Source: Malacoraja senta
Lineage: Eukaryota
Length of the DNA stretch: 64,000 nt
Direction of reading: 5' to 3'
NCBI GenBank assembly: GCA_038087875.1
Contig: CM075981.1
Span: forward strand, 13,268,001-13,332,000
A program made the translations under genes and the position numbers. The notes under the pieces were generated by a model, which searched no databases, had not been told where the DNA came from, and worked only from the letters and a program-made list of their open reading frames with translations. Positions 1-62,959 of the stretch are shown here, piece by piece. Position 1 is the stretch's first letter. The number at the start of each line of letters is the position of its first letter.

Positions 1-527
1 GCAAGTTTATTTATATAGCACATTTCAGCAACAAGGCAATTTGAAGTGCTGTACACAAAGCAGTAAAAAGCAATCAAAAGCAATTAAAAACAGTCATTAA
101 AAAGAATAGAAAATAAAAACAAGCAAAAATAGAATAAGACAAGTATAAAATACAAGAATAAAAATTACAGTGCAATGTTAGAAATTAATAATTATTTAAT
201 TTAATTAAAATTAAAAGTAATTAAAAGCAGGGTCAAACAGAAAAGTCTTCAGTCCCGATTTAAAAGAACTGAGAGTTGGAGTGGACCTGCATTTTCCTGG
301 AAGTTTGTTCCTTATATGTGGTGCATAAAAACTAAACGCTGCTTCTCCATGTTTAGTTCTGACTCTGGGGACAGAAAGCAGACCTGTCCCAGATGACCTC
401 AGAGGTCTGGATGGTTCATAATGTAGCAGAAGATCAGAAATGTATTTTGGCCCTAGACCATTCAGTGCTTTATAAACCAACAGTAATATTTTGAAATCAA
501 TTCTTTGACAGACTGGAAGCCAGTGCT
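1..527 (-). mobile_element. L2-clade LINE, 3' fragment (ORF2 C-terminus + 3' tail)
   Basis: ORF 211-480 (VYKALNGLGPKYISDLL..YEPSRPLRSSGTGLLSVPRVRTKHGEAAFSFYAP..FKSGLKTFLF) is the typical L2 ORF2 end; minus-strand tail TGTACAGCACTT..GTGCTATATAAATAAA. Confidence 0.85.
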
Positions 528-13582: not shown

Positions 13583-13759
13583 TAGCTTGTTTACACCAAA
13601 CTCTTTAACATTGCTTTTCCAATCCTTCTTCCCTCAAGAATTGTTTCCATACAATTCTCCTGTCTTCTATTCTTGCCTACTTACTGGCCCGTCAGAATCC
13701 TCTCTGCTCCTCAGCGCCCCGCTTCTCCTTCCCTCCCTCTATCGCTGTTTGATGCCAAG

Positions 13760-13865
13760 CAATTGCACCCGATCGATCGAGCGCTGGCGTGCTACCGCTC
13801 CGCTCTCTGGGATTTGTAGTCCATTGTCTGTGGGCACACTGCAATGCCTAGGATGCATCGCCCAG
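13760..13865 (-). promoter_or_regulatory. Probable promoter: CpG-rich patch with ZNF143/THAP11-type ACTACAAATCCCA motif
   Basis: tgggatttgtagt at 13808-13820 is the reverse complement of ACTACAnnTCCCA; SBS-like cctaggatgcatcg at about 13847-13860; about 230 bp upstream of the first ATG. Confidence 0.65.
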
Positions 13866-15899
13866 AGATAATCCACTTTTAAAGTTTGCACTATACTGTG
13901 GTGGTTGTGGGTTGATTCACGTCCTACCAGCTCTCGCTTTACCCCGGTAGCAAAAATGCTCCCAGTTAAAACCACGAGCCAGTGGTGGCGTTGGGTTTCT
14001 ACAATCTGTACTGTATGTGGGACACAAAGTAACTCAGCAGGTCTGGCAGCATCTCTGGAGAACATGGATGGGCGACGTTTCGGGTCGAGACCCTTCATAT
14101 CATTTGAACTCAAACGTCGCCTATCTATGATCTCCAGAGATGCAGCCTGACCCGCTGAGTTACTCCACTACTTTGTGTCCTTTCATGTGTAAACCAGCAT
14201 CTGCAGTTCTTTGTTGCTACATGTTGTACTCTCTGGGGTTGCGAGTTATCTGGGGTGGCGCCACAGGGTAGCGCTGTGTGGATCTTTGGGAATGGCCAGG
14301 TTGCGGTCTTGGAATTGGGAAATCTGCCGATTGCAGTGTGAGGAGTTTGAGGTGTAATGTGAAGTTTTGTAATTATGTTGCACAGTGTGAAGTTTTCTCT
14401 TTGGCTGTGAAATTGTTTCCGGGTTGCACTGACTGTGTGAAAGTTTGAGACGTCTATACGTGGCAGTATCGGGCTTTGGAGTGTAGAAACAAAGAGCTTC
14501 AGATGCCGGTTAATACACAAAAGGACACAAAGCGCTGGAGTAACTCGGCTGGTCAAACTCGGCTGGTCTTCCCTGAAGAACATGGATAGGCGACGTTCAG
14601 AAGAAGGGCCTCGACCCGAAACTTCGCTTATCCGTGTTCCCAAGGGCGTTGGAGTGTCGGAAGATAACACAGTGTTTTGGGATGTCTGTGTCTTCTTCAA
14701 TGTGCGACTTTGGGGCGTTTGTAGAGCGACTTCTTGATTAGAACGGGTGTCAAGGGTTATGGGGAGACGGCAGGGAAATGGAATTAGGAGGCAGAGACCA
14801 GTCATGAGTCAATGTCGGAGTAGACTCGAAGGGCCGAAGGGTCTAATTCTACTCCTGGTCCTATAACTTGCGACATGGTGATTTTTGAGAGTTTGTACGT
14901 GCATCAAGCTTTTTTGTGTGGAGTTTTGGCGGGGCGGGGGTGGGGGGGGAGTACTGTGTGATGTTTAAGCGGGCTCAAAGGTTATACACAGTACTGGTGT
15001 TTTGCAGTGTAGGGGGTTCGGTGCCAGGCAAAGCGATGGGCGTGTGTGTGTATGTGTGTCTGGTGCACGGTGGACAACTTCGGGGTTTTAGATTAAAGGG
15101 ATTTCGAGATGTCTGAATGCTTGTAGGTTGAACGGTGGGTATGTAATTTTGCAATAGATTGTACAGCCATGGGGCAGAAATCCCGGGGGGTCGGGGGACA
15201 CGCCCCTCCCATGTTTTGAGAGGTGGGGACAATCCTCAACATGTTTTGCAATCCGGATTTTGAAATTCGGTGAAATAAACTCTTATTAAAATCTCCGCTG
15301 TCCGCGAGATAGTAGAGGTGTCACTGTTCCTTGTTAAATGTCTCTATTAACATCGTATTAACACATATGTCACCAATTGTGTTTTGACCTTCAAAGATTA
15401 CTGAAGGTATTCACGGAGAATTTCTTAAAGCTGTCTGATGGGGGTACTATTACCATCTATATAATTAAAAGTCTCATCTTGACCACTTCCTGTCTGCGCT
15501 GTATATTGATTTTAGAAAAAATGCTACCCTGTATCGCTGTGATTTTTGGCCACCTTACAGTCCTCCGCTGAGCCAGCCTCGAAGATTTTTGCCATCGATG
15601 AAAAATAAAAAAGTTATGAGTGTTTAAAAAACATTGAGAGCTGATTGGTCCTCTCACCTGTTAATCACCGCGATGAAGGTAACGCCTCTTCCAGGGGGGG
15701 GGGGGCAGGACTACCCCGGATGTCTGAACATGAGTCAGCCACTCTGCAAGATCGTGAAAGAGAGGCCGCGACTGTCATTCTAAGCTGTGAATCAACTGAA
15801 CTGTGAATCTGCAATGTACTTGCAATAAATGATTTGTTAGCCCTTAGTGATAATGCCATGAGTTGTTTGGCCTGCTGCCCTGCCTGTGCTTGAAAGTGC

Positions 15900-16777: not shown

Positions 16778-17439
16778 GTGGAGAGGTGGAATATTGCGTT
16801 GGGGGACCAAACCTCCCGTGTGAAACTGGGACCCAACGGGTCCCACTTAGTCTAGTTTGAACTAATTGGAGGATTTGGTGGATGGGAAAGATTTAAACGG
16901 ATTGAATGGGTTTCCTGGCTGGCTTGCAAGTAAGTCCCTCATTCATGGTCACTCATGTTATTTAGTATTTTTTCCCCATCTGTCTCTCTCTCTCTCGCTC
17001 TCCCCCCTCTAAGGTTGGTTCTTCTGTTTGCTTCAGTTTTATTCGTTTTAGTGTTATTTATCACATTGTAGCTTTTGAAAGATTGAAGCGGGTATCAGAC
17101 TGGTCACCAACCAGGTCAGCTCCCTATGTTACCGTCCACAGGGCCCACGGCCAAAGCCTCATGTGTGTGTGTGCGCGCATGGCCACCAAGAAGCCGCGCC
17201 CCAAATCGTGTTCCCCCCCCCCCCATGTTTTTATAGTGATTTCCGCCCCTGTACAGCATGGAGTTTCAAGATGTCCAGGAACTGTACATTGTGCATTATG
17301 ATACTGTAGTATTTGCCGGTTGTAAATTGAGGAGTGTCGATGGTGGTACCTTGTGAATTTATGAAAGTCGTAATCCATTGAGTTTTTGTAGTGTTCCTAG
17401 ATTGTTGCGTGTGGTGTTTGGAGCTGGAAGGACAGTAGG

Positions 17440-18095: not shown

Positions 18096-18970
18096 AGGGT
18101 TGAGTATTGCAGGGCTTCAAGGTGTTGGGTGTCGCTTGGTTGTACCATCAGGAGATTTGGTGTGTCGAGATATGTAGTAATGGCACAATATTGTGTCTGT
18201 GCATTTTAGATTCATGGCTTTGGACTGTTGGAATATATGTGGTTCACAGTGACAGGTTTGAAATACCTGTGGATTGTTGTGTAGGGTTTGTGGTCTGTGG
18301 GTTGTGTGGGTGGAGTTGGGAGTATGGAGTGTACAGTGTGGGGTATTGGGCTGTCGAGGTATCAGGGCGGAAGACATTTTGGGGCTTGATGTGTTGGGAT
18401 ATCTATGGATTGTGTAGTGTGAATGCAATGTGGTATCTGCAATTTAGATTGCAGGGCTTTGGAGTGTTGGAATGTATGTGGGTCAAATAGTGTCAGGTTC
18501 TGGGGTGTTTATCAATTGTACAGTATAGTATTTGGGGTGTCTAGGTGCTGCACAGTGTGAGGTCTTGGTGTGTCTGTGGGTTGTACTGTGTAGATATTTT
18601 GGGGTATTGAATCATCTGTTACATGTACAATGCAGAGTTCAGGTGTGTATGCGAGTAGTTTCCAGGTATCTGTCAGTTGTACTGTGAGTGCGTGTTGTTC
18701 TGGGGTGAGGAGTGCCTTGTGGGCAATGTTCACCCCACAGATGTTGCAAATTCTACACAGTACATCTGAAGATGTTCCAACAGCTTGAAACAAATCCCAC
18801 ATTATACCACCCACAACATAGCCAAACTTGATATTGTACAAGGCACCCAAAATTGTACAAGATATTGTACAATCCTGGGAAACCTGAAATCCCACAGTGT
18901 ACAACCTACAGACATAGCACAACCTTGCATCATGCAACCCATAGATACTTCAAATCCCTCATTGTAGATC
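18095..18970. repeat. Degenerate ~32-33-bp minisatellite (gttgtacagtgtg..ggtgtctgtgg), orientation switch near 18730
   Basis: Recurrent TGTAC(A/T)GTGT cores; GT-rich before 18730 and CA-rich after. Confidence 0.6.
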
Positions 18971-19712: not shown

Positions 19713-20547
19713 AGTAAAGTAAAGTAAAGTAAGTTTATTTATATAGCACTTTTCAGTCGATTTCAATCAAAAGCCAAAGTGCTTTACAGAGAAAACTATC
19801 CATACAAATAATAAAAAGAAGTAGAAAAAAATGACACAACACACTATAAGAAATTCAACACGAACATCCCCCCACAGTAGGATCTACACTCTCCACTGTG
19901 AGGGAAGGCACCAAAATGTCCAGTCCTCCTCCTCCTCCTAGTCCACCCGAGGTCGGGGCCAGTTTGAGGCCACTGCAGCCAGTCGCTGCAACGGCAGCCC
20001 GATGATTATAGGCCCCACCCGCATTGGGTGGAAAAGTCCTCAGCAGCTTAGAAATGTCTGGAGCGGCCGCTCCTTCCCCGGAGACTGCGACGCCCGTGGA
20101 CTTTAGGCCGTGCCGGTTGGAGCTTCGACTCCGCGGTGCTTCCGATCCAGCGCCGCCTGCCCGCGGCGGGATGCCCTCAAACCGCAGACCGCAGACCGTG
20201 GCTGCTCGATGTTGGTGGTCGGCGGTCACAGCACTCCGGAGCGGCAACCCGGCAAGGCATCGCCCGCTCCTTGTTGGTGTCCCAGCGCTGTGCTGCCGAA
20301 GCTGTGGTCCCGGCAGGAACGCCGCTCCAGCCCGATGGAAGGCCGCATGGGGAGATCGGGGATGCGATTTGGAGGAAAACCGCATCTCCGACCAGGTAGG
20401 ACTGGGGTTATAACAGTCCCCCCCCCCCCACATAGAAAGAATAGACTCCCCAAAAAAAATGTTTTAGACAATAAAAAAGTTAGAGGACGGACTGCAGGCA
20501 GGCAGCCATACAAACGGCGCCCACTCCTGCACATCCGCCATCTTGAA
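19713..20547 (-). mobile_element. GC-rich non-autonomous retroelement (family copy B) with L2-type tail
   Basis: Starts TTCAAGATGGCGG..CTGCAGTCCGTC; CACAGT..ACTGTG hairpin; tail TGTAAAGCACTTTG..GTGCTATATAAATAAA(CTTTA)n. Confidence 0.75.
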
Positions 20548-20993
20548 AAGTTGGAGGAGATATAATAGATCTGACAGAAGTATATAAGATTATGTGAGGC
20601 ATAATAAGGGTAGACAATCAGAACCCTTTTCCCAAGGTGGAAGTGTCAAAGACTAAAGGTCAGAGGGGTAAAGTTTAAAGGAGATGTGCAGGGCAAATTT
20701 TTAACAGAGAATGGTGGGTGCCTGGAATGCACTGCCAGGGGTGGTGGTGGAAGCAGAAATAATAGTGTCAGTTAAGAGGCTTTCAGATAGGCATATGCAG
20801 GAAATGAAGTGACATGGATCACGTGCTTTCAGAGGAGATTAACTTAGCATCATGTTTGGCACAGACATTGTGAGTTGAATGGCCTGTTCCTGTGTTGTAC
20901 TGTTCTATATTCTAATATAATATTGAGTTTGGCAATGTCTGCACATTGTACAGTGTGGGAGGCTGCGAGTTGTTGGTATATATGTGGAGCTTA

Positions 20994-22352: not shown

Positions 22353-24978
22353 TGTGGCAGTTGCTGGGAAGTTGGCTACTCCCTGGTTCACCCCCCTCGA
22401 CACTTAATATACTGGTCCGGGGGCGGGGCCCAGCTACGAGTTTAAGGGCAGTTGGCAGTTTGTGTGGCAGTTGGTCTTCAGTCTCCCACTGAAGCAGAGA
22501 GTAGTGTGCTGTGTTAATTAAAGCCTTTACAGAATTCACCTGGCTTCTCGCCTTCATTCCGGGCTTTCCACGCACCCGCTGCACTGGTGACCCTCGACAT
22601 TTCGTCGCAAGTCGTGATGGACCCGAATATGCTTCAGGACTCACACCCGGTCAACCGCCCTTGGCCCAGGCCGGCGCCGCCGATCTCCACACCGTCGCGC
22701 TGAAGCTGCCTACCCTGTGGACCGACGAGCCCGAAATATGGTTTTACCAGGCCGAGGTGCAGTTTGCACTACGGGGCGTGACGGCAGATACCACTAAGTA
22801 CTACCTGCCAAGGTAGACGCTGTGCGCCAGTTTCCACGACCGGCCACCGTGAGGGGCCTCCAGGAATCCGTCGGGATGGTGGCCTTCTACCACCGTTTTG
22901 TACCGTCCGCGGCCAGGATCATGCGCCCGCTGTTTCACCTCATGGCGGGCAAACGAAAGGAGTTTGAATAGACTGATGAAGCGGTGGCGGCGTTCCACCA
23001 GGCCAAGGAGGCCCTGGCTAGGGCCACGATGCTCGTGCACCCACGGTCGGATGCACCAATCGGGGCTGACGGTCGACGCATCCAAGGTAGCGGTTGGTGC
23101 GGTGCTGGAGCAGCTGATCGACAGGCGTTGGCGGCCTCTGCCATTCTTCAGCAGGCACCTCAGCGGCGCACAGCGGCACTACAGTACCTTTGACCGCGAG
23201 CTCCTCACCCTTTACCTCAGCGTGCACCACTTCCGTTATTTTTTGGAGGGGCGGACATTTGCAGCTTACACGGACCAGAAGCCCCTCACCTTTGCGTTTG
23301 CCAAGGTTTCCAACCTGTGGTCCGCTCGTCAGCAGCATCAGTTGGCGTTCATCTCGCAATACACTACCTCCATTTGTTTCATCGAGGGCAAAGACATCAG
23401 AGTAGCCAATGCCTTGTCTCATCCCGCGGTCAATGCCGATTTGCAGATGTCCGACGGCATTGACTACTCAGCCCCTGGCTGCCGCCCAGCTTGACGGATG
23501 GGGAGATGTCCGCCTATCGTACCGCAGTTTTGGGCCTGCGGTTGGAAGCGTTCCATGTGGCCCCGGAGGTGCGAGGCTGCTGTGCGACATCTCGACTCGC
23601 CCATCATCCCCATCGCCTGGCGGCGCAGAGTGTTCGAGGTGCTCCATGGGCTGGTCCACCCTTCCATTCAGGCGACGACGGCACTCGTGGCTTCCCATTT
23701 CATGTGGCACGGGTTGCGCAAGCAGGTTGGACATTTGGCGCGTACCTGCATCCCATGCCAAACTGCCAAGGTACAGAGGCATGTTTGGGCACCGGTCCAT
23801 GCGGTCTGCGTCCCACGCCAGCGGTTTGACCATATCCACGTGTACATCGTGGGGCCGCTGCCACCTTCTTGGAGCTTCACCCACCTCCGGACCATGGTCG
23901 ACCATTTCACGCGGTGGCCGGAAGCGGTTCCATTGAATGACACCTCTGCGGCCACTTGTGCCCGTGCTTTAGCGGCACACTGGATTGCCCGATTCGGAGT
24001 GCCGCTGGACATTACATCCGACCGGGGGCCTCAGTTCACATCTGAACTGTGGACGGCCATGGCCTCCCCAGGGTTAACCACGGCGTATCATCCGCAGGCG
24101 AATGGCTTGGTGGAGCGTTTCCACCGGCAACTCAACGATTCCCTGAACGCTCGGCTCAAGGACCCGGACTGGGTCGACGCATTGCCGTGGGTTTTGCTGG
24201 GTGTCCGCACCGCACCCAAAGAGGACTTGGCCACCTCCTCAGCTGAGTTGGTGTATGAGGCCCCACTGACAGTGCCCGGTGAGTTTATCCCATCAGCACA
24301 GGGCCAGACGGAGCAGCCATCAGCCGCCCTGCAACGGCTCCGAGACACGGTGGGCAAGCTGGCACCGGTGCTGACGTCTCGCCACGGTTCATGTAGGCCA
24401 CACGTTCCTTCAGCTCTCCAGGACCGCCTGTTTGTTTTCCTGCGTCGGGACGTGCACCGGACGCCTCTTCAGTGGCCGTACGAAGGACCATTCAAGGTCC
24501 TCGAGCGTGGCCCACATTCGTTTTGGACATGGGGGGTCATCGTGAGACAGTCTCCGTTGCGCGGCTGAAGCCGACACATGTGGACATCAGCCAGCCGGTG
24601 CTACTTGCGCGGCCTCGCCCTCGGGGTCGCCCTCCGTTCCGGCCCTTTCCACAAGCGCCCGTGCCGCCACCTTCACCTGGCAGTGTGTCGCCGGTTCCTA
24701 CGCCTGCCATGGTGCGCACACGGGCTGGTCGTATCGTACGTCCCCCTGTCCGTTTCATGCCTCCGTGTCTTGGGGGGGGGGGGTCCTGTGGCGGTTGCTG
24801 GGAAGTAGGCTGGTTCACCCCCCTCGGCACTTAATGGACTGGCCCAGCTACGAGTTTAAGGGCAGTTGGTCTTCAGTCTCCCACTGAAGCAGAGAGTAGT
24901 GTGCTGTGTTAATTAAAGCCTTTACAGAATTCACCTGGCTTCTCGCCTTCATTCCGGGTTTTCCACGCACCCGCTACA
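22353..24978 (+). mobile_element. Gypsy LTR retrotransposon (CsRn1/Kabuki-like), internally deleted and frameshifted
   Basis: LTRs 22353-22583 and 24787-24978 (TG..CA), CACT TSD, tRNA-Trp-like PBS TGGTGACCCTCGAC, poly-G PPT; gag VALKLPTLW..WF.QAE.QF; RNase H VDAS..AVGAVL..YSTFDRELL; integrase HHCC, ITSDRGPQF, AYHPQANGLVERFHRQL. Confidence 0.95.
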
Positions 24979-27022: not shown

Positions 27023-27469
27023 TTAAGGTCTGAGAATTGAAAGTTCAAAGGAGATGTGCAGGGCAAGTTTCTTGCCTGGAATGCGCAGCCAGGGGTGGTG
27101 GTGGAAACAGTAATGATGATGGCATTTCAGAGGCATGTGAATATGCAGCGAATGAGGGACATGGAGCATGTGCACGCAGAATGGAGTAGTTTAATTTGGC
27201 ATTGTTCTTGGCGCAGATATGGGCTGAAGGGCCTGTTCTTGTGCTGTACCGTTCTATGATTTATGTACAAAGCTAAAGGCATTAATTGTCTATTGTGGAT
27301 TTGGAAACGATATTAAAAGGTAAAACAATCAGTAATTAGGCTGTTGCAGGGGCTGGTCCTGGGGCCCTAGTTTCTCTCAAGCAATATTAATGATTACAAT
27401 GTGGGGATTAAATATAATTATTTCAAGAGTCAAGAGTGTTTAACTGCCATATTTAACTCCAGACATTTT

Positions 27470-27825
27470 CCAAGCCGCTGAGGAGTGTTTTACCTGACGT
27501 CGGAGTTCCAGCTTTCCGGCAAAGAGGGCCTGAAAACATCGGCCTGGCTGTGGAGGCCACAAATAGGCCCCGACCTCGGGTGTTTCACAGAGGAAGAGGA
27601 CTTAACTTTTTGTTGCCTTTCCCCACAGTGGAAAATGTTGATTCTGTTGTGGGGGGACGTTCTTGTTGAATTCTATGTCATTTTGCTGATTTTTAATTTT
27701 TCTATGGATGTACGGAAACGTTATTATTTCTTTTATTATTTATTTTATGTAAAGCACTTTGGTTTCAACGCTAGTTGTTTTAAACGTGCTATATAAATAA
27801 AATTTACTTACTTACTTACTTACTA
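27470..27825 (+). mobile_element. GC-rich non-autonomous retroelement (copy D), 5'-truncated, L2-type tail
   Basis: CCCCACAGTGG..TTGTGGGGGGACGT hairpin; TGTAAAGCACTTTG..TGCTATATAAATAAA(TTAC)n. Confidence 0.7.
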
Positions 27826-33431: not shown

Positions 33432-33897
33432 GATAGACACAAAATGCTGGAGTAACTCAGCGGGACAGGCAGCATCCCTGGAGAGAATGAATGGGTGACG
33501 TTTCGGGTCGAGACCCTTCAGACTGATGTCAGGGGAGTGGGCGGGAAAAAGATAGAATGTAGTCAGAGACAGTAAGACTGGTGGGAGAACTGGGAAGGGG
33601 GAGGGGATAGAGAGGGTAAGCAAGGGCTATTTGAAGTTAGCGAAGTCAATGTTCATACCACTGGGGTGTAAACTACTCAAGCAAAATATGAGGTGCTGTT
33701 CCTCCAATTTGCGCTGGACCTCACTCTGACAATGGAGGAGGCCCCGGACAGAAAGGTCAGATTGCGAATGGGATGGGGAGTTGAAGTGCTGAGCAACCGG
33801 GAGATCAGGTCAGTTAAGATGGACTCTCGACCCGAAACATCACCCATTCCTTCTTCCCAGTGATGCTGCCAGTCCCACTGAGTTGCTCCAGCATTTT
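33432..33897 (-). mobile_element. Penelope 3' fragment with inverted pLTR (continues at 34864-34912)
   Basis: Minus-strand pLTR + GIY-YIG end, then a plus-strand pLTR split by element A. Confidence 0.8.
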
Positions 33898-34863
33898 CCG
33901 GAAGTGGCGGCGCTGTCGTACAGCAGCGGCTCGCCTGCAGTCCGTCTGTTTTTACTTTTTTTGTTGTTTTCTTTTGTCCTGTTTTAGTTAAATTTTAGTT
34001 TATTGGGTTGTGTATGTGTGGGGTGGGGGGGTGAAACATGACTTTTGTCTCTTCCTTCGGGGGAATGCGACTTTTTCTTCTCGTATCCCCCTTCTCTGCC
34101 TCCGTCTGCGCTGAGGCCAAAATGGCGGAGCTGCCGGCCTCCAACTCCAACTGCGAGCGACCGACCGACCTCGAGGCTCCGGAGTCAGAGCCAGGACTTA
34201 CCAGCGCGAGGCTGGCCAACTTCGGGGCTGCGGTGGCGTTCCAGCGGTGGCGACCGAGGACACTGGTGGCGACCTGAATCCGGAGGCTCGGCCGCAGCTG
34301 GCCCAGTGGACGACATCTTCGGGAGCGCGAGGCTGGCCAACTTCGGGGCTGCGGTGGCGTACCGGCGGTGGCGACCGAGGACACTGGTGGCGACCTGAAT
34401 CCGGAGGCTCGGCCGCGGGCCCAGTGGACGACATCGTCGGGAGCGCGCAGGTCACAGGTTGGTGACCTGTTTTTCTGGGGCTCCAGCAACTACAGCTGCG
34501 TCCGCTGGACTGGAGGGCGGCAGCTTCGGCAGCTTCGACCACCCCGGGCCACGGAGTTTGAGCCGGCCCGTCGCGGAGCACGGATTTGGCCGCGTGACTG
34601 GCTTACCGTCGCCCGGCGGGGTCACAGCATCAGAAGCCTGGATCGCCTCAGCGCAGAGGGAGAACAAAGCGGGAAGAGATAGAGACTTTAAGACTTTTGC
34701 CTCCATCACAGTGAGGAGGTGCCTGGTGAACTCACTGTGGTGGATGTTAATTTGTGTTTATTGTGTGTTTTGTCATTTATTATTATATGTATGACTGCAG
34801 GCAACGAAATTTCGTTCAGACCGAAAGGTCTGAATGACAAATAAAGGAATCTCTAATCTCTAA
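33898..34863 (+). mobile_element. GC-rich non-autonomous retroelement (copy A), apparently full length, Rex1/Babar-type tail
   Basis: ATTTT TSD (33893-97, 34864-68); starts CCGGAAGTGGCGGCG..CTGCAGTCCGTC; ~121-bp internal tandem duplication (34203-34447); CACAGTGAG..CTCACTGTG hairpin; tail AATTTCGTTCAGACC-GAAA-GGTCTGAATGACAAATAAAG(AATCTCT)n. Confidence 0.8.
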
Positions 34864-36779
34864 ATTTTGTGTCTACCTTCGATTTAAACCAGCATCTGCA
34901 GTTCTTTCTTTCACAATTAGTTCTGGCTGACAGCTCTTCTTAAATGTGACAGTGAGCGGTTCAAGGCCAGTGAATTTATCTTAGTGTCCTCCCATGTTGG
35001 AATGTTTGCTTGTGGGTTGAATAGTTTTAACAAGTAAATGAAGCAACTTTTACAGCTCAGGTTTTATGTTCAAAGCAGATCAACTCTGTCTACTTTGTAA
35101 AAGTTAAGTATGTGTTAATCAACTAGTTAAAAATCAAGGAAGCATAGTTTTCGTGGATGGTCAACAATCATGTGGGATGTCTATCAGTTCACCCTATCAA
35201 CCTCAGCAGATGCAATAGAACATAACAATATCCCAGTGTGCACAGGCAAAAGAAAATGTATCAAATAAATCTAAAGAAAATATGTCTTGATATTTTTTAA
35301 CGTACTTTTGAAGTTTTGTAATACTGTATTGCGAAACACAGCAGCTGATTTATGTTCTCTAAACAAATTTATGAAATATAAGTAGCAATCGATTCATGTG
35401 AAATAAGCAAGATATTAAGTGATACTAAGTAAAACAATTTATAAAGAATTAACATACCCGTTTTTCACATACAAGACCTTACAATGTGACGGCCCTTTCA
35501 CAAAACCATGTTGACTTTTCTTAATAGCCATATTTTTTCCAATGCCTTACATTAATATTTCACTATGTAGATGTTAAGCTAATCAGCTTATAGTTTCCTG
35601 CCATTTGTCTCCCTCTTTTGTTCGAATAAAAGAGTTATCTTTGCTGTTTTCAAATCTAATGGAATCTTCCCCAAATCTCGGTAATTTTGGAAAATTAAAA
35701 ACATGCCAACTATCCCACTTCTTTATAACACCCTAAGTAGAAGAACTTCAGGATCTAGGGATATGTCAACTTAATACTTCGATAACTTGCTCAGTACAAT
35801 TGCCCAGGCAATTTTAATTTTCCTGAGTTCTCCTCTCCCTCCTGATATATAGATGTATTGATGCAAAATATGTGCTTGATTCATTGCCAATCTCTTTTCC
35901 ATGTTTAATTCCCCAAAAATTATTTTTATTTTTGAAAAGTGAGGTTCTTTTCTTTTTCAACATCTTTTTTAAACAATTGTGCTTCACTGCGGATCGTGAG
36001 AGGCCACTGAGACGCATAAAACAGGCATAACTAAAAATGAAGTACTTTACTAAATTAATTAATCTAATTTAAAAGTAACTAAATAGTCAAAAATAGCACA
36101 CAATCGTAGGAGCCAAGGTGAAATTGTGGCCACTTTGTGAAAACCAGCAATCAGTTTTTGAGTATAATGACTGTGAATATTTGCAAACAATAGCAACAAA
36201 ACAGGCTTTGTAATTAGTGTAGCACGGAGACAAGGTTATTGTTTATTATCTCACAGTTTAAAATGGCAAGATCTATGATAACAAAACTGGTACTGTGAGA
36301 AACCGCACAACTTGAAGTCGAGTTGTTACAAGGAACGTAAACTATGAAACTTAGCACAAAGACTGTCTTGTTCAACTATGAACTGATCCAAGGACAATTT
36401 TACAAAGTAACCTTGTAAACAGTTCAACAGGTGCCCAGTACTTTCCACTCATAATCATTACAGTACTTGGCTGAGGGCCAGTTTCAAGACTGCAACTTCT
36501 AACTGTGCCGCAAAGCCTCACATGCTGCGTGATCGATGGCTGGCTGGTTTGATCAGCCCCACTGCTAAAGTCAGACCCACGCCTGATGGTCAACCTAATT
36601 CATCATCTGTGATACATATGAATTATAATTAATGAGAACTAATGAGCATGAATGGTTGTAGAGTGAATTGTAAACTATGAATTCTCTTAGGATTATAGGT
36701 CCGTGTTGAGGCTCACTGTGTTTCCTGTCTGATTTATTTAGTCTGCCCAAATGGGAATTCCAGTTTTCATATTGCAAAG

Positions 36780-45010: not shown

Positions 45011-45608
45011 TTTCTTGGTTGACTGAGAAAATGGTGGGAAACAATGGCCTCGATCTTTGTGTCTGAGAACCAATAAGCTCCTTGAACATTGTTGGATGTA
45101 CGGGTTCAGGGGATAATAGAGAGTGCTTTCAGATTACATTTTGTAGAGGGGAAGAGAAGCTGGGATAAAAAGTAAACTGCAGGAGGAACTCTGCCATTCA
45201 GACAACATCTGTGGAGATGAAGTGATGGGCGATGTTTCGGGTTGAGACCTTGCACCAGGTCATAAGGGAAACTGGGTTATCTTTTCAATTAAAGATGTGC
45301 ATGGATAGCAAGTGTGTAGGAAAGAACTGCAAATACTGGTTTACACCCAAGATAGACACAAAATGCTAGGGCAACTCAGCGGGTCAGGCAGCATCTTTCG
45401 AGAAAAGGAATTGGTGACGCTTCAGGTCGAAACGCCTTCTTCAGACTGGGAATCAGTGGGAGGGGGGGGGGGGGTTGCTAAATATTTTAACTCCCCTTCC
45501 CATACTGACCTTTTCGTCCTGGGCTTCCTCCACTGTCAGCGTGAGGCCACACGCAAATTGGAGGAACAGCACCTCATATTTCATTTGGGCAGCTTACAAC
45601 CCAGTGGT

Positions 45609-46412
45609 ATTGGATTGGATTGGATTGGATTCAATTTATTGTCATTGTCTCATAAGAGACAATGAAATGCTATTTTCCTTACAGTCATAAAAATTTAAAA
45701 AAGCACAAAACACAGAAGTCCACGACACAAGCATCCCCACAGCGGCACCAAAGTTCCCCACTGTGAGGGATGGAACCAAAGTCCAGTCCACCTCCTCGCT
45801 GATCTTCCCAGATGTTCACCCGTGGTCGGGGGCTCCCGAGCACCCCGTGGTCGCCGCTACGGGTGGCCCGATGTTCAGGCCCTCTCGCCGGGAATGATGG
45901 AACCCCAACGTCGAACGGGAGAACATCCTCAGCGGCCCGGACCTCTAAATCGGCCACGTCCCACCGGAGTCCGCGGCTCCCAAAGTCCACAGGCCGTGCT
46001 GGGCGGAGATTCACGCTGGCGACCCCCGACAAAGGGTCGCAGGACTCCGCGATGTTGGTCAGCGCCGCCCGCGTTGGGAGCTCCGCGAACCACAGCTCCG
46101 CGATGTCGATGCAGCAGGCCCAACACTCCGGAGCTCCAAACGGCGATCCCAGGTGAGGCATCGCCCGCTCCGCGATGTATCCAGCGCTGCGCCGCCGCTG
46201 CTGGAGCTCTGGTTGGTCCCGGCAGGAAAGGCCGCGCCAATCCAGTAGGTAAGTCGCGGGGGGGCGGGCGAGGACGCGACTCGAATAATTGTCGCATCCT
46301 CTCCAGGAAGCGACTGAAGGATGGTTTCCCCCTTACCATACCCTCTTCCCCCCACATAAAGAAAATAAAAATTAAAAAAACATACTTTAAACATAACAAA
46401 AAATAAAAAAAG
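45609..46412 (-). mobile_element. GC-rich non-autonomous retroelement (copy C), Rex1/Babar-type tail
   Basis: T-rich/TGTGGGGG segment, GC-rich body, CACAGTGGG..CCGCTGTG hairpin, tail CATTTCATTGTCTC-TTAT-GAGACAATGACAATAAA(AATCC)n. Confidence 0.75.
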
Positions 46413-47054
46413 ATTTGTATGTTTGTATGAATGTTGAATGACTTATTCAATCATTTTGTGTCTATCTATGGAATAGTCAATATGTTTGCAGAGATTAGGG
46501 CGTCATTGTGATTGTTATAGTTGACTCTGTTCTGACTATAATTGATTAAAATCAGGATGTCAAAGTTCATGTTTGTATTCCTTCAATTCAAGAGGGAGGA
46601 ATAGCAGAAATATCATGACAACAGAAACACATCTACGGAAAAGGAATCCACTTAATTTTTGGATGAGTTAATCAAGGTCTGTGCTCGACTGCTTACAGTT
46701 ATGCAGATTAGTTACGAGTTAAACTTTCTACAAATGGTCTGTTTAACCAGCAAACTGAATCCTGACTCAACCTTCCCAATCAGTCAACAAACTTTTTTGT
46801 CCATGACACACTGTGATAAGAAGGAACTGCAGATTTTGGTCTAAACCGAAGTTAGACACAAAATGTTAGTAGAAGTTACTAACTAGAAAATTCAACATTC
46901 TTACCACTGGGTTGCAAGCCACCCCAGCAAAATGTGAGATGCTGTTCCTCGCATTTGGGTGTGGCCTTAACATTTTGTCATCACTCGTCATTTGACATTG
47001 TCGTGTTATTATTACCTAGTCACTCATCTTTATCTCTGTCCCTTGAAATTACAT

Positions 47055-48835: not shown

Positions 48836-50587
48836 GTGCAAGGTGAATTTATTATGGGGAACAAGGAAATGGCAGATGAGTTGAACAGGTACTTTGGATC
48901 CGTCTTCACTAAGGAGGACACAAACAATCTTCCTGATGAACTAGTGGCCAGAGGAGGGGTGACGGAGGAACTAAAGGAAATCCACATTAAGCAGGAAATG
49001 GTGTTGGGTAGACTGATGGGACTGAAGGCTGATAAATCCCCAGGGCCTGATGGTCTGTATCCCAGGATACTTAAGCAAGTGGCTCTAGAATTCGTGGATG
49101 CATTGGTGATAATTTTCCAATGTTCTATAGACTCAGGATCAGTTCCTGTGGATTGGAGGTTAGCTAATGTTATCTCACTTTTTAAGAAAGGCAGGAGAAA
49201 GAAAACAGGGAATTATAGACCAGTCAGCCTGACATCGGTGGTGGGGAAGATGAAATAGCCGCACATTAGATAGCAGTAACAGGATCGGTCCGAGTCAGCA
49301 TGGATTTACGAAGGGGAAATCATGCTTGACTAATCTTCTGGAATTTTTTGAGGAAGTAACTAGGAAAATGGACAACGGAGAGCCAGTGGATGTAGTGTAC
49401 CTGGACTTTCAGAAAGCATTTGATAAGGTCCCACATAGGTGATTAGTGGGCAAAATTAGGGCACATGGTATTGGGGGTAGAGTGCTGACATGGATAGAAA
49501 ATTGGTTGGCAGACAGGAAACAAAGAGTAGGGATTAACGGGTCCCTTTCAGAATGGCAGGCAGTGTCTAGTGGGGTACCGCAAGGTTCGGTGCTGGGACT
49601 GCAGCTATTTACAATATACATCAATGATTTGGATGAAGGGATTCATAGTAACATTAGCAAATTTGCAGGACACAAAGCTGGGTGGCAGTGTGAACTGTGA
49701 GGAGGATGCTGTGAGAATGCAGGGTTACTTCGACAGGTTGGGGGAATGGGCAGATGCATGGCAGATGAAGTTTAATATGGATAAATGTGAGGTTATCCAC
49801 TTTGGTATCAAAAACAGGAAGGCAGATTACTATCTAAATGGCGTCAAGTTGGGAAAAGGGGAAGTACAATGGGATCTGGGGGTCCTTGTTCATCAGTCTA
49901 TGAAAGTAAGCATGCAGGTACAGCAGGCAGTGAAGAAAGCGAATGGCATGTTGGCCTTTATAATAAGAGGAATCGAGTATAGGAGCTAAGAGGTCCTTCT
50001 GCAGTTGTACAGGGCACCAGTGAGACCACACCTGGAGTATTGTGTGCAGTTTTGGTCCCCTAATTTGAGGAAGGACATTCTTGCTATTGAGGGAGTGTAG
50101 CGTAGGTTTACAAGGTTAATTCCCGGGATGACAGGACTGTCATATGCTGAAAGAATGAAGCAGTTAGGCTTGTACACCATGGAGTTTAGAAGGAGGAGAG
50201 GGGATCTTATTGAAGCATATAAGATTGTTGAGGGTTTGGACATGCTAGAAGCAGGAAACATGTTCCCGATGTTGGGGGAGTCCAGAACCAGGGGCCACAG
50301 TTTAAGAATAAGGGGTAAGCCATTTAGAACGGCGACGAGGAAACACTTTTTCTCACAGTGAGTTGCGAGTCTGTGGAATTCTCTGCCTCAGAGGGCGGTG
50401 GAGGCCGGTCCTCTGGATACTTTCAAGAGAGAGCTAGATAGGGCTCTTAAAGATAGCGGAGTCAGGGGATATGGGGAGAAGGCAGGAACGAGGTACTGAT
50501 TGGGGATGATCAGCCATGATCACATTGAATGGTGGTGCTGGCTCGAAGGGCCGAATGGCCTACTCCTGCACCTATTGTCTATTGTTC
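48836..50587 (+). mobile_element. CR1 LINE, 5'-truncated (RT + 3' UTR), disabled
   Basis: [38 protein letters not shown]; in-frame stops. Confidence 0.95.
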
Positions 50588-50722
50588 TACCTGTTCGCAA
50601 CAACAAATCCCTTTGTAAACACACCCTCCCTAGCCAACAATTGGCCTGCCAGGGAACCACCCTACCTGAGGTCATCAGTTGCCGGCCCTGATCTGTCCTG
50701 GTTTTTTACGCCTTCAGTCCAG

Positions 50723-50866: not shown

Positions 50867-51312
50867 TTTAAGAAGCTCCCCAGAATCTTGACAAAAACTG
50901 CAGAAAACTACTCTAATATTCCTTTATGTGTGTCTTGTTCAATAATGCTACTGTGAAGAGCTTTGGGATGTTTTGCTGTGTTAAAAGACTACTCAAATAC
51001 AAGTTGAAGGGTTTTGGATTAAAGTACTAATGCATAGGTTTGAGTACATTAACCCAGTTGACATTCTGCATTATTAATGTGCTTTTCTTTAGATGAGGGT
51101 TTAAGGTAAGAGCTTCAAGACCTTCTTCACTCTCAGGTATATGTAAATTTTAATCCAGTACTATTCAAAGAGCAAAGATGTTCTCTTAGCCAACTATAGA
51201 TAAGAAATAACAGTATGACTCTGAAACAAGGAAATAACAAACAGGCTGGTCTAGGCTGGTCAGTGGCTCTTTAAGATGGATGGGGCAGACTGGAGCCATC
51301 TAAACTGCTGGA

Positions 51313-54300
51313 GACATATTTAATGGGATAATCGAGGATGGAGTTAAAGGGAAAGAGAGTAAAGGGATGGTTAATGACCCCAGAATTAACGGGAAAGGAA
51401 GCTCACAAAGGGATAAGAGAGTATGGCCAAGGATAATAGGGATCGATGTGAAAGGTGAGATGCGTAAGGAATTAAAAGTATTGTATATGAATGCGTGAAG
51501 TATAAGAAGTAAAGTAGATGAGCTTGAGGCTCAGTTAGAGGTTGGTAGATATGACATTGTGGGGATTACTGAGACGTGGCTGCAGGAGGATCGGGCCTGG
51601 GAACTTAATATTCAGGGTTATACATCCTATAGAAAGGACAGGCAGGTGGGCAGAGGAGGGGGGGTAGCTCTGCTGGTGAGGGATGGAATTCAGTCCCTTG
51701 TGTGGGAAGACATTGGGACTGACGAAGTAGAGTCAATGTGGATTGAGTTGAGGAATTGTAAAGGCATGAAATCACAAATTGGTGTTATTTACAGACCCCC
51801 AAATAGTAGCTGGGATGTAGGGTGTAAGCTGCAGCAGGAGTTAAAACTGGCATGTAACAAAGGTAATGCCACTGTGGTGATGGGCGATTTCAATATGCAG
51901 GTAGACTGGGAAAATCAGGTTGGTTCAGGACCCCAAGAAAGAGAGTTTGTAGAATGCCTCCAAGATGGATTCTTAGAGCAGCTTGTAATGGAGCCGCCCA
52001 GAGAAAAGGCAATTCTGGATTTAGTGTTGTCCAATGAACCAGATATGATAAGAGAACTCGAGGTAAAGGAACCGCTTGGAGGTAGTGATCATAATATGAT
52101 TAGTTTTAATCTGCAATTTGAGAAGGAGAACGTTAAATCGGAAGTGACAGTGATGCAGTTGAACAAAGGGGACTATGAAGGCATGAGAGGGGAGCTGGAC
52201 AAAGTAGACTGGAAAGGGATCCTAGCAGGAATGATGGTGGAACAGCAATGGCAGGAATTTCTGGGCATAATCCGGAAGACGCAGGATCATTTCATTCCAA
52301 AAAGGAAGAAAGATTTTAAGGGGAGTAGGAGCCAACCGTGGCTGACAAGAGAAGTTAGGGATAGAATAAAACTAAAAGAAAAGATGTATAACACAGCAAA
52401 GAGTAGCCAGAAGCCAGAGGATTGGGAAACTTTCATAGGACAACAGAAGGAAACAAAATGGGCAATACGGGCTGAAAAGATGAAGTATGAAGGGAAGCTG
52501 GCCAGGAATATAAAGAAGGACAGTAAAAGCTTCTTTAGATATGTTAAGGGAAAAAGAGTAGCAAAGTCAAATGTGGGTCCCTTGAAGGCTGACACGGGTG
52601 AAATTATTATGGGCAACAAGGAAATGGCAGAAGAGTTGAATAGGTACTTCGGATCTGTCTTCACTAAGGAAGACACAAACAATCTCCCTGATGTACTGGA
52701 GGGCAGAGGATCTAAGGGGGTAGAGGAACTGAAATACATTTTCATTAGGTGAGAAATAGTATTGGGTAGGCTAATGGGACTGAAGGATGATAAATCCCCT
52801 GGGCCTAATGGTCTGCATCCCAGGGTCCTCAGGGAGGTGGCTCTAGAAATAGTGGACGCATTGGTGATCATTTTCCAATGTTCAATAGATTCAGGATCTG
52901 TTCCTGTGGATTGGAGGATAGCTAATGTTATCCCACTTTTCAAGAAAGGGGCGAGAGAGAAAACGGGGAATTACAGACCAGTTAGCCTGACTTCGGTGGT
53001 GGGAAAGATGCTGGAGTCAATTATTAAAGAGGTAATAATAGGGCATTTGGATAGCAGTAAAAGTATTAGTCCAAGTCAACATGGATTTATGAAAGGGAAA
53101 TCATGCTTGACTACTCTTCTGGAATTTTTTGAGGATGTGACAAGTAAAATGGATGAAGTGGTGCCAGTGGATGTAGTGTATTTAGACTTTCAGAAAGCCT
53201 TTGATAAGGTCCCGCACTAAAATTAGAGCACATGGTATTGGGGGTAGGGTGTTGACATGGATAGAAAATTGGTTGGCAGACCGGAAGCAAAGAGTAGGAG
53301 TGAACGGGTCCTTTTCAGAATGGCAGGCAGTGGCGAGTGGAGTGCCGCAAGGCTCGGTGTTGGGGCCGCAACTGTTTACCATATATATTAATGATTTGGA
53401 AGAGGGAATTAGGAGCAACACTAGCAAGTTTGCAGATGACACAAAGCTGGGTGGCAGTGTGAACTGTGAAGAGGATGTTAGGAGGTTGCAGGGTGACCTG
53501 GACAGGTTGAGCGAGTGGGCAGATGCGTGGCAGATGCAGTATAATATAGATAAATGTGAGGTTATCCACTTTGGCGGCAAAAACAAGGCGGCAGATTATT
53601 ATCTCAATGGGGTTAGGTTAGGTAAGGGGGAGGTGCAGCGAGACCTGGGCGTCCTTGTACACCGGTCACTGAAAGTTAGCTTACAGGTACAGCAGGCAGT
53701 GAAGAAAGCTAATGGAATGTTGGCCTTCATAACAAGAGGATTTCAGTATAGGAGTAAAGAGGTTCTTCTGCAATCGTATAGGGCTCTGGTGAGACCACAT
53801 CTGGAGTATTGTGTACAGTTTTGGTCTCCTAATTTGAGGAAGGACATCCTTGTGATTGAGGCAGTGCAGCGTAGGTTCACGAGATTGATCCCTGGGATGG
53901 TGGGGCTGTCATATGAGGAAATTGAAAAGACTAGGCTTGTATTCACTGGAGTTTAGAGGGATGAGGGAGGATTTTATAGAAACATATAAAATTATAAAAG
54001 GACTGGACAAGCTAGATGCAGGAAAAATGTTCCCAATGTTGGGCGAGTCCAGAACCAGGGGCCACAGTCTTAGAATAAAGGGGAGGTCATTTAAGACTGA
54101 GGTGAGAAAAAACTTTTTCACCCAGAGAGTTGTGAATTTATGGAATTCCCTGCCACAGAGGGCAGTGGAAGCCAAATCACTGGATGGATTTAAGAGAGAG
54201 TTAGATAGAGCTCTAGGGGCTAGTGGAGTCAAGGGATATGGGGAGAAGGCAGGCACGGGTTATTGATAGGGGACGATCAGCCATGATCATAATGATTGGC

Positions 54301-54358
54301 GGTGCTGGCTCGAAGGGCCGAATGGCCTCCTCCTGCACCTATTTTCTATGTTTCTATG
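51313..54358 (+). mobile_element. CR1 LINE, nearly complete ORF2 (endonuclease + RT) + 3' UTR, few disablements
   Basis: GITETW, GGGVAL, YRPP, MGDFN, SDHN; [31 protein letters not shown]; (TTCTATG)n tail. Confidence 0.96.
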
Positions 54359-61970: not shown

Positions 61971-62448
61971 TGCCTTCCAATTTCTCAGTTCAATCACCAC
62001 TCATTGGTTCCTTATATCTTTTTGCCCCAGACCTCATATCCTCTGGTCCTTGTCCCATCGCCAAATGTGAACAGTTTTTCTTCGTCCACCTGACCTAACC
62101 TGTCATAATCTTGTATAGTTCTACCAATTCACTCTTCAAACTTCTTTTTTCCAAGGGGAACAATCCAAACTTCTCCTTTCTAACCTTGTACCTCAATGTC
62201 TCATCAGTCTCTACCAAATTTATGTTGCGAAAATGAAAAAAAACCTTTGGGACATAACAACTGGGAAAGAGAGGTAAAAGAAGGTAATTTTAAACAGCTG
62301 GGATGGTAGAGGGTTGGCTGGAAAGGACAAAGAGGACATCCATGATTGGATGGTCATGTTGTTGGTTAAATATTTGTGTTGCAATTTATTGGAACAGAAT
62401 AGCGTCAGGCTTGAATTAGTTCATGATTACAATTTATAAATATAATGT

Positions 62449-62959
62449 AGTGGCGGCGCCTAACGGCGGCGGCTCGACTGCAGTCCGTCTGTCTTTTTTT
62501 AATTTTTGTTTAGTTAAATGTAGTTGTTTGTGTTTTTTAATATTGTTTTTAACTGTGTATATGTGTGGGAGGGGGAAACTTTAAAAAATCTCTTCCCTGT
62601 ATGGAGGACCCGACCTTTCTCTGTCGGGTCTCCGTTGTCGTTGGGGCCTAGCACCGTGGAACGGCCTCCAACCTGAACGACCTGGGGCTCCAGTCGCGGA
62701 GCCTGCGGACTACTCACCATCGTGGAGCTGGCCGAGTTCGGAGCTTGGAGAGCTGTGGTGGCGTGCGGCTGCGACCCGACCCCAGAGATTCGCAGGTCTG
62801 GTGGACGGTAACATCGGGAGCTCGCGGGTCCCTGGTGGGTGACCGCTTTTCGGAGTTCCCGCAACGGCAGCTACTCCCGCCCGAGTTGCGGGGTTGAAGA
62901 TGACGTGGAGCTGGGTCTAACATCGCCCGGCGCGGCTTTAATGGCCGCGGGACTTGCTA
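62449..62959 (+). mobile_element. GC-rich non-autonomous retroelement (copy E), 3' end missing
   Basis: AGTGGCGGCGCC..CTGCAGTCCGTCTGT, T-rich tract, TGTGTGGGAGGGGGAAAC, GC-rich body as in copy A. Confidence 0.7.

What the first reader, a model, noticed from the sequence alone, without database searches (positions are those of the whole stretch)
33898..34863. Modular non-coding retroelement family with a Pol II-like head, a conserved hairpin and interchangeable LINE tails
Seen in five copies: A 33898-34863 (+), B 20547-19713 (-), C 46412-45609 (-), D 27470-27825 (+), E 62449-62959 (+). Shared architecture: head GGCG..CTGCAGTCCGTC (A, B, E), T-rich tract, TGTGGGGG, a highly variable CpG-rich body, then a CACAGT(G)..(A/G)CTGTG hairpin whose loop and inner stem differ while pairing is largely kept (A-D). 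The 3' ends then split: B and D end like the L2 at 1-60 (AAAGCACTTTG..TGCTATATAAATAAA), while A and C end in a stem-loop + TGACAA(A)TAAA tail typical of Rex1/Babar. No tRNA A/B boxes are evident; A starts with ETS CCGGAAGT and B with YY1 CAAGATGGCG. A has a clean TSD. Inference: a SINE-like parasite with an internal Pol II promoter that swaps tails to hijack different LINE clades, with the hairpin as a conserved RNA element. I do not recognise it as a named family.
Basis: partly seen in the sequence, partly recalled or inferred. Interest (0 to 1): 0.75.

Follow-up and report, generated by a model that had tools for sequence, protein, structure and literature searches.

The report
Gene-less skate retroposon borrowing LINE tails
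This skate-like genome carries a very abundant jumping element of 0.8-1.0 kb that has no gene of its own, ends in tails copied from two kinds of autonomous jumping genes and probably borrows their enzymes; it looks undescribed but belongs to a familiar kind of genomic parasite.

Summary
All five copies are homologous (nhmmer E from 3e-9 to 3e-45), and I found a sixth 66-bp fragment.

- **Architecture:** a conserved head, a T-rich tract, ATGTG plus a G-run, a body with the composition of a CpG island (observed/expected CpG 0.9-1.0, against 0.53 for the window), a 13-bp hairpin, a spacer, a LINE-type tail and a microsatellite.
- **New here:** a second conserved hairpin just after the G-run, with compensatory base changes.
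- **Insertion evidence:** copy A has a 5-bp target-site duplication, confirmed by uninterrupted copies of the repeat it landed in. Copies C and D are 5'-truncated.
- **Non-coding:** the body shows no codon pattern and no shared reading frame.
- **Not a Pol III SINE:** there is no tRNA or Rfam match, and T5-T8 runs lie in the first 100 nt.
- **Abundance:** sequencing-run contigs from at least three coded organisms show the family is high-copy.
- **Tails:** the tails of B and D match a genuine L2-like LINE end in this window. The "Rex1" label for the tails of A and C could not be tested.
- **Tail swapping:** one tail replacement explains the data, so repeated swapping is not shown.
- **Promoter:** the Pol II promoter is inference only.

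The scan has noted this family in at least ten other windows of this genome. I could not query Repbase or Dfam. Verdict: a real, probably undescribed variant of the LINE-dependent non-autonomous retroposon.

The parts
33898..34863 (+). Copy A, full length (966 bp), Rex1-like tail type
   Evidence: Its limits are fixed by the 5-bp duplication and by empty-site joints.
33893..33897 (+). A: target-site duplication ATTTT, 5' copy
   Evidence: joint 33892->34864 with 5 shared letters, seen in 3 runs. Loose ends at 34864 read on into the host-repeat consensus.
34864..34868 (+). A: target-site duplication ATTTT, 3' copy
33898..33946 (+). A head: starts CCGGAAGTGGCGG and ends with the conserved 12-mer CTGCAGTCCGTC
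   Evidence: No consensus structure was found for the head.
33947..34013 (+). A: T-rich tract with T4-T7 runs
34014..34031 (+). A: ATGTG plus G-run
34059..34091 (+).
   Evidence: Fold z -4.2. On the alignment of A, B, C and E, 94% of cells pair and 4 pairs change on both sides.
34092..34702 (+). A: CpG-rich non-coding body; contains a 121-bp tandem duplication (34203-34329 and 34324-34447)
34703..34743 (+). A: 3' hairpin (hp2), a 13-bp stem
34790..34847 (+). A: tail, running TATGACTG..., stem-loop 34812-34837, then AATGACAAATAAA
   Evidence: Fold z -4.6. Aligned with C's tail.
34848..34863 (+). A: terminal microsatellite (AATCTCT)n
19715..20553 (-). Copy B, full length, L2-type tail. It holds a YY1-like word (20534-20543), the head 12-mer (20486-20497), hp1 (20354-20393), hp2 (19866-19906), the tail (19733-19790) and the microsatellite (ACTTT)n (19715-19732). 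CTCCTC flanks both ends.
45611..46424 (-). Copy C, 5'-truncated near the end of the head, Rex1-like tail. It holds hp1 (46267-46304), hp2 (45731-45771), the tail (45632-45689) and the microsatellite (AATCC)n (45611-45631). ATAC flanks both ends.
27457..27824 (+). Copy D, strongly 5'-truncated, L2-type tail. It holds hp2 (27619-27659), the tail (27747-27802) and the microsatellite (TTAC)n.
62441..62959 (+). Copy E: head, T-rich tract, G-run, hp1 (62601-62635) and body. The 3' part is missing and the 5' limit is uncertain by about 8 nt.
17096..17161 (-). Fragment F: 66 bp of body, of the A/E type
1..525 (-). 5'-truncated L2-like LINE end. An open frame (214-525) is followed by a T-rich 3'UTR and by the same terminal tail as B and D.
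   Evidence: Pfam is blank. The L2 label rests on my recall of the ORF2 C-terminal motif.

Best explanation
These are copies of one abundant family of non-autonomous, non-coding non-LTR retroposons of skates, 0.8-1.0 kb long.

Shown:
- The copies are homologous from head to spacer.
- They carry no conserved reading frame.
- They end in a stem-loop, an AATAAA-containing terminal motif and a short microsatellite, as LINEs of the 'stringent' 3'-recognition type do.
- They show short target-site duplications and 5' truncation.
- One tail type matches the 3' end of an L2-like LINE in the same window.

Inferred:
- The RNA is copied into the genome by target-primed reverse transcription, by LINE enzymes that recognise the borrowed tail. 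The partner would be an L2 for B and D and a Rex1/CR1-like LINE for A and C.
- The L2 tail was acquired secondarily, by one template switch or recombination just after the shared word TATG(A/G)(C/A)TG. D still keeps about 16 nt of the A/C-type tail start before its L2 part.
- Transcription is by Pol II from an internal promoter, formed by the conserved 5' head (AAG(A)TGGCGG ... CTGCAGTCCGTC) and the CpG-island-like body, as in LINE 5'UTRs. Pol III would stop at the T5-T8 runs in the first 100 nt.
- The two conserved hairpins are RNA elements of unknown role. They may serve stability, export or enzyme recruitment.
For: - **Homology:**
- **Non-coding:** substitutions between B and C fall 59/65/65 by codon position, and 14 of 17 indels are not multiples of 3. 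The open frames of B and C lie in non-homologous frames. They are no longer than shuffles of the body alone give, with P 0.13 and 0.07. There is no Pfam match and there are no protein relatives.
- **No small-RNA head:** ARAGORN finds no tRNA, Rfam finds nothing, and T-runs lie early in the sense strand.
- **Retroposition marks:** A's 5-bp duplication with empty sites in paralogues, the truncated copies C and D, and the microsatellite ends.
- **Tails:** the stem-loops fold with z from -2.4 to -4.6. In the stems of A and C, four upper pairs differ on both sides yet still pair (read). GTGCTATATAAATAAA and the preceding AGCACTT are shared by B, D and the L2-like LINE end.
- **Abundance:** every part of A is covered by about 100 or more distinct contigs. 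The summed depth is 1e4-1e5 times that of the single-copy flank in two DNA runs of different coded organisms, and lower in two further runs.
- **Established knowledge:** stringent-type LINEs recognise a 3' stem-loop, and their terminal repeats serve template slippage (review PMC3747384).
Against: - No transcription start, polymerase or mobilisation was tested.
- The run guessed to be RNA shows almost no head or body signal (depth 0-50), against 84-423 on hp2 and spacer and about 2000 on the bin that also holds the start of the host repeat.
- No Rex1 element was available, so the partner of the A and C tails is a guess.
- Hairpin covariation rests on four sequences. Shuffles reach the observed score in 40 of 500 (hp2) and 10 of 500 (hp1) trials.
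- Only about 58 nt of B and D align with the L2-like end.
- The head shows no consensus fold.
Confidence: 0.7

Rival explanations
1. The family is an internally deleted LINE (a 'mini-Rex1'). Head, hp1 and CpG-rich body would be the partner LINE's own 5'UTR. hp2, spacer and tail would be its 3'UTR. One sub-lineage would later have picked up an L2 end. This concerns origin and is compatible with the best explanation of how the family spreads now.
For: CpG-rich 5'UTRs holding internal Pol II promoters with a YY1 site near the start are typical of LINEs (L1; my own knowledge). In two further runs the 3' 250 nt (hp2, spacer and tail) are far more abundant than A's body (bins from 34620 on against 34110-34415). 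That fits a 3' part shared with a more widespread element.
Against: No remnant of a LINE coding region lies in any copy. The same junction is kept in sub-lineages whose bodies are only 41-46% alike in alignment, so the short form itself propagates. In this window hp2 is found only in these copies. The excess of the 3' part may also simply reflect faster divergence of the body, given the 82% likeness cut-off.
Confidence: 0.3
2. The element has no promoter of its own. It is transcribed as part of host or neighbouring transcripts, and only its tail matters for mobilisation.
For: No transcription evidence exists for the head. The RNA-like run has little signal on the head. Other retroposons noted in this genome are thought to rely on self-cleavage rather than on a promoter (scan notes).
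Against: The two copies with a defined 5' end (A and B) start within about 8 aligned nt of each other, just upstream of a conserved word. That fits a fixed start, not read-through. No ribozyme match was found.
Confidence: 0.2
3. It is a Pol III SINE with a degenerate tRNA, 5S or 7SL head.
For: It has the general modular SINE layout and LINE-derived tails.
Against: ARAGORN finds no tRNA in the window and Rfam finds nothing. No A or B box lies in the head, and T5-T8 terminator runs lie within the first 100 nt. The length of 0.8-1.0 kb is also atypical.
Confidence: 0.03
4. The body encodes a protein, so this would be an ORF1-only element. B holds a 192-codon ORF running from the conserved ATG to just past hp2.
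For: B holds a 192-aa ORF and C a stop-free run of 213 codons.
Against: These two frames are not homologous. There is no codon-position bias and most indels shift the frame. A and E have stops in all frames. Such open runs are expected in a body of 65% GC. No Pfam family or relative was found.
Confidence: 0.03

Closest known systems
SINE superfamilies with a conserved central domain and several LINE partners (CORE-, V- and Deu-SINEs; bivalve and elephant-shark examples in PMC11481361 and PMC5499810)
   Same: A modular build: one conserved internal part carries different LINE-derived 3' tails, so one lineage can use more than one LINE clade.
   Different: Those have tRNA-derived Pol III heads and are 150-500 bp long. 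This family has no small-RNA head, has early T-runs, is 0.8-1.0 kb long and has a fast-evolving body with the composition of a CpG island. What is conserved here is two hairpins and a short head, not a central sequence domain.
UnaSINE1/UnaL2 of the eel and other 'stringent' SINE/LINE pairs (review PMC3747384)
   Same: A 3' stem-loop is followed by a conserved short motif and a 4-7-nt terminal repeat shared with the LINE. The stem varies by compensatory changes while the flanks are conserved.
   Different: The head and body are unrelated. The partner enzymes were not tested here.
SVA and LAVA composite retroposons of hominoids (my own knowledge)
   Same: Non-coding, about 1 kb or more, GC-rich and CpG-rich in the middle, lacking a Pol III head, and mobilised in trans by a LINE.
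   Different: SVA uses L1 through a poly(A) tail (relaxed recognition). It is built from recognisable older repeats and has a true VNTR. Here the tails are sequence-specific. Apart from the LINE-derived tails, no part matched any other element in this window. Only copy A has an internal duplication, of 121 bp.
Internally deleted LINEs that keep only their UTRs (for example the R2 'SIDE' elements; my own knowledge)
   Same: They have no ORF, keep LINE-type ends, and would carry a LINE-type internal promoter.
   Different: Homology of the head and body to any LINE 5'UTR could not be tested. One sub-lineage carries the tail of a second LINE clade.
HE1 SINE and HER1 LINE of elasmobranchs (Ogiwara et al. 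1999; my own knowledge)
   Same: Same host group, and the same principle of a shared 3' tail.
   Different: HE1 is a tRNA-derived SINE with a CR1-type tail. The CR1-like LINE ends in this window do not resemble either tail type found here.

Membership tests
Classical SINE (Pol III, small-RNA-derived head) | Head derived from tRNA, 7SL, 5S or snRNA, with internal A and B boxes | tested here: not met
   ARAGORN finds no tRNA. Rfam finds nothing at gathering scores or at E up to 5. No box pair lies in the head.
Classical SINE (Pol III, small-RNA-derived head) | A transcript that Pol III can complete, with no early T4+ terminator | tested here: not met
   T5-T8 runs lie within the first 100 nt of A, B and E.
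LINE-dependent non-autonomous retroposon (stringent tail parasitism) | 3' end homologous to the 3' end of an autonomous LINE of the same genome | tested here: met
   This holds for B and D only. Their last ~58 nt align with the end of the L2-like LINE fragment at 1-525(-), including a 16-nt identical terminal motif. For A and C no LINE was available.
LINE-dependent non-autonomous retroposon (stringent tail parasitism) | 3' stem-loop plus terminal short tandem repeat | tested here: met
   Folds; microsatellites.
LINE-dependent non-autonomous retroposon (stringent tail parasitism) | Marks of target-primed reverse transcription: target-site duplication and 5' truncation | tested here: met
   A has a 5-bp duplication with empty paralogous sites. 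B has CTCCTC at both ends. C and D are 5'-truncated.
LINE-dependent non-autonomous retroposon (stringent tail parasitism) | No coding capacity of its own | tested here: met
LINE-dependent non-autonomous retroposon (stringent tail parasitism) | Mobilisation in trans by the partner LINE's enzymes | not testable with these tools
   This needs a retrotransposition assay.
Rex1/Babar-tailed element | 3' region homologous to a Rex1 3'UTR, followed by oligonucleotide repeats (as described in PMC6274825) | tested here: inconclusive
   Terminal repeats and a conserved tail are present in A and C.
SVA-like composite retroposon | Central VNTR of tandem units | tested here: not met
   Only A holds one 121-bp duplication. 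The self-similarity of B, C and E is at shuffle level, and TRF finds only tiny repeats.
SVA-like composite retroposon | Poly(A) end and L1-type mobilisation | tested here: not met
   The ends are microsatellites after specific tails.
Internally deleted LINE (5'UTR plus 3'UTR) | 5' part homologous to the 5'UTR of the partner LINE | not testable with these tools
   No full-length L2 or Rex1 lies in the window. The copies match none of the L1, CR1-like or other LINE pieces here.
Element with an internal Pol II promoter | Transcripts that start at nt 1 of the copies, and promoter activity of the 5' part | not testable with these tools
   Only contigs were available, not raw reads. The YY1-like and ETS-like words are present but are not evidence of function.

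The most novel reading that the evidence does not exclude
A Pol II-driven, self-propagating 'mobile CpG island'. On this reading, a long non-coding retroposon lineage keeps a CpG-island-like body free of CpG decay. It needs that body as its internal promoter or to escape methylation. Structured RNA hairpins would be its only conserved core. It would have moved from a Rex1-type to an L2-type LINE partner and seeded tens of thousands of CpG-island-like segments across skate genomes.
Probability: 0.25. Interest if true: 0.7.

Novelty: new variant of a known kind. Interest (0 to 1): 0.48.

Why it matters
If confirmed, it would broaden what counts as a SINE-like parasite in vertebrates. This one is long, has no Pol III head, and keeps two RNA hairpins and a short head while its body evolves fast yet stays CpG-rich. 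It has also changed LINE partner at least once.

In practice, a high-copy element made largely of CpG-island-like sequence will confuse CpG-island and promoter prediction in skate genomes. It may also have supplied regulatory DNA. Finally, it offers a natural system for asking which RNA features L2-type and Rex1-type reverse transcriptases recognise.

Tried and rejected
1. **Coding body.** Rejected. My first ORF-length test (P about 0.02) was biased because AT-rich ends were shuffled into the GC-rich body. The body-only test gives P 0.13 and 0.07.
2. **Globally structured RNA.** Whole-element fold z-scores of -5.5 to -7.4 come from the same mixing of compositions. Body-only z-scores are -0.5, -0.6, -2.9 and -4.9, the last for A with its duplication. 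Only hp1, hp2 and the tail stem-loops are supported.
3. **VNTR body.** Not supported beyond A's 121-bp duplication. A recurring word ACATCG..GGAGC is suggestive only.
4. **Structured head.** There is no consensus fold.
5. **Fetching more copies.**
   - Protein word searches with element ORFs were blank.
   - The exact look-up found none of ten window ORFs in the collection.
Loci of related rays and sharks, found through the neighbouring patatin gene, therefore could not be fetched.
   - The metagenome pattern scan was blank.
   - The bacterial genome scan gave only chance matches to a 15-base word, which were ignored.
6. **Naming the L2-like open frame.** Pfam and the protein atlas were both blank.
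7. **Literature.** Searches for the tail and head words and for skate repeat descriptions found nothing relevant.
8. **Fixed-spacing pattern for hp2**. It was badly designed and is disregarded. The covariance model replaced it.
9. **Copy number.** The summed depths are not copy numbers, as the tool itself warns. I use them only to say 'high-copy'.

Full report
**What is there.** I read all five stretches. Single-copy nhmmer searches show they are homologous:
- B-C: E 3e-45 over the whole length
- B-D: 1e-32
- A-E: 1e-19 to 1e-22
- A-C: 1e-11
- A-B: 3e-9
- C-E: 2e-9

They form two body groups, A+E and B+C+D. Aligned body identity is 60-69% within groups and 41-50% between them. A 66-bp body fragment of the A/E type lies at 17096-17161(-). 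A family profile finds nothing else in the window. Together the copies fill about 6% of the 64 kb. Earlier notes of the scan place the genome in a skate or other cartilaginous fish.

**Anatomy, 5' to 3'.**
1. A head of about 50 nt starts with AAG(A)TGGCGG-like words and ends in the 12-mer CTGCAGTCCGTC. That 12-mer occurs three times in the window, only at the heads of A, B and E, against 0.11 expected.
2. A T-rich tract of 70-90 nt holds T5-T8 runs.
3. ATGTG plus a G-run follows.
4. It folds in A, B, C and E with z from -3.0 to -5.0. On the alignment 94% of cells pair and 4 of 9 pairs change on both sides. For example, U-A and G-C in A and B become C-G and C-G in E, with U-G in C as an intermediate.
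5. The body is 350-600 nt long, with 64-67% GC and CpG observed/expected of 0.88-1.02. The window as a whole has 0.53.
6. On the alignment 94% of cells pair and 3 pairs change on both sides. Most other variation is through G-U pairs. A covariance model of hp2 hits only A-D in the window.
7. A T-rich spacer ends in TATG(A/G)(C/A)TG.
8. The tail comes last, followed by a microsatellite.

**Tails.**
- B and D end in a stem formed by AGCACTTT and its complement, then GTGCTATATAAATAAA, then (ACTTT)n or (TTAC)n.
- The same last ~58 nt close a 5'-truncated LINE at 1-525(-). That element has a 104-codon open frame directly upstream of a T-rich 3'UTR. I recognise its C-terminal motif as L2-like from memory. 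Pfam and the protein atlas gave no name.
- A and C end in a 10-11-bp stem-loop, then AATGACAA(A)TAAA, then (AATCTCT)n or (AATCC)n.
- Between A and C the lower stem and its flanks are conserved, while four upper pairs differ on both sides and still pair. This pattern is described for LINE 3' recognition hairpins (PMC3747384).
- The Rex1 label fits the published description of Rex1: a conserved 3'UTR followed by oligonucleotide repeats (PMC6274825). That description is not specific, and I had no Rex1 sequence to compare.

**Retroposition marks.**
- A sits inside a copy of another, extremely abundant repeat. Contigs from paralogous copies run straight across the site, and the joint 33892->34864 has 5 letters that fit both sides.
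- B is flanked by CTCCTC, which moves its start to 20553.
- C lies in another copy of the same host repeat, flanked by ATAC, and lacks the head.
- D lacks everything upstream of the last ~150 nt of body.
- E lacks its 3' part, and no remainder is found before the window ends.

**Not coding and not a Pol III SINE.**
- B's 192-codon ORF and a 213-codon open run in C lie in non-homologous frames.
- Substitutions between B and C are spread 59/65/65 over codon positions, and 14 of 17 indels shift the frame.
- Open runs of this length are expected in a body of 65% GC.
- No Pfam family and no protein relatives were found.
- ARAGORN finds no tRNA in the window and Rfam finds nothing.
- The early T-runs would stop Pol III.

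**Abundance and spread.** I laid contigs of four public runs on A and its flanks at 82% or greater likeness. Every part of A is covered by about 100 or more distinct contigs. In two DNA runs of different coded organisms the summed depths are 1e4-1e5 times that of the adjoining single-copy flank. The tool warns that this is not a copy number, so I conclude only that the family is high-copy and present in several related species. A's duplicated segment is much rarer in the second organism. In two further runs the last 250 nt (hp2, spacer and tail) are far more abundant than the body. Either the body diverges faster, or the 3' part is shared with a more widespread element. The run guessed to be RNA has next to nothing on the head and body, so there is no evidence of expression.

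**How it most likely works.** The shown and inferred steps are listed under the best explanation. In short, a non-coding RNA with a borrowed LINE tail is reverse-transcribed into new sites by LINE enzymes. Pol II transcription from the head and CpG-rich body is plausible. The two copies with defined 5' ends start within about 8 aligned nt of each other, AATAAA lies in every tail, and Pol III is excluded. It remains untested. D keeps about 16 nt of the A/C-type tail start before its L2 part, so the L2 tail looks secondary. With four tailed copies, a single replacement explains the distribution.

**Comparison and novelty.**
- It works like a SINE that parasitises stringent-type LINEs. Like the CORE-, V- and Deu-SINE superfamilies, it carries tails of more than one LINE clade (PMC11481361, PMC5499810).
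- It fails the defining SINE features of a small-RNA head and a Pol III promoter.
- It resembles SVA in being long, non-coding and GC-rich, but it lacks a VNTR and a poly(A) end.
- A deletion origin from a LINE remains open.
- I found no description in the searchable literature. Repbase and Dfam could not be queried.
- The scan itself has noted this family at least ten times elsewhere in this genome. One follow-up (s1-178004) reached a similar reading without data on copy number.

**Limits.** The other routes to further copies failed. All family-level statements therefore rest on five copies, one fragment and one contig-laying run.

Noticed in passing
33600-33897 and 34864-34925; also 45520-45610 and 46425-46440: A and C are both inserted into copies of one extremely abundant host repeat, whose summed contig depth is 1e6-1e7. 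This is probably one of the very common short retroposons of this genome. Whether the family prefers it as a target, or it is simply everywhere, is open.
   Followed up: partly
1-525 (-): A 5'-truncated L2-like LINE end: a 104-codon open frame, a T-rich 3'UTR and the same terminal motif as the tails of B and D. It continues beyond the window start.
   Followed up: partly
34203-34447 (+): A recent 121-bp tandem duplication inside copy A (94.5% identity). This segment is much rarer in a second organism's run.
   Followed up: yes
Bodies of A, B, C, D, E and F (e.g. 34313, 34431, 62811, 62920): A short word, (A/C)ACATCG(N0-2)GGAGC, recurs one to five times per body, 50-180 nt apart. This hints at old internal repeats, but self-similarity is not significant except in A.
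   Followed up: partly
49300-50600 (+), 51200-54360 (+), 57870-59114 (-): CR1-like LINE pieces with endonuclease and reverse-transcriptase domains. The two read to their 3' ends close with the same GGCCGAATGGCCT...CTGCACCTATT tail, which is unrelated to either tail of the family studied.
   Followed up: no
22898-24568 (+): Open frames with Gypsy-type RNase H and integrase domains: a piece of an LTR retrotransposon.
   Followed up: no
18100-18700 (+) and 55760-56250 (+): A GT-rich degenerate minisatellite, and a tandem array of GTCGTAGGAGGTC-like units. Both are unrelated to the finding.
   Followed up: no
12713-14805 (-): Exons of a patatin-domain (PNPLA-like) host gene. The best relatives are sawfish, stingray and shark PNPLA-type proteins. 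Copy B lies about 5 kb upstream of it.
   Followed up: no
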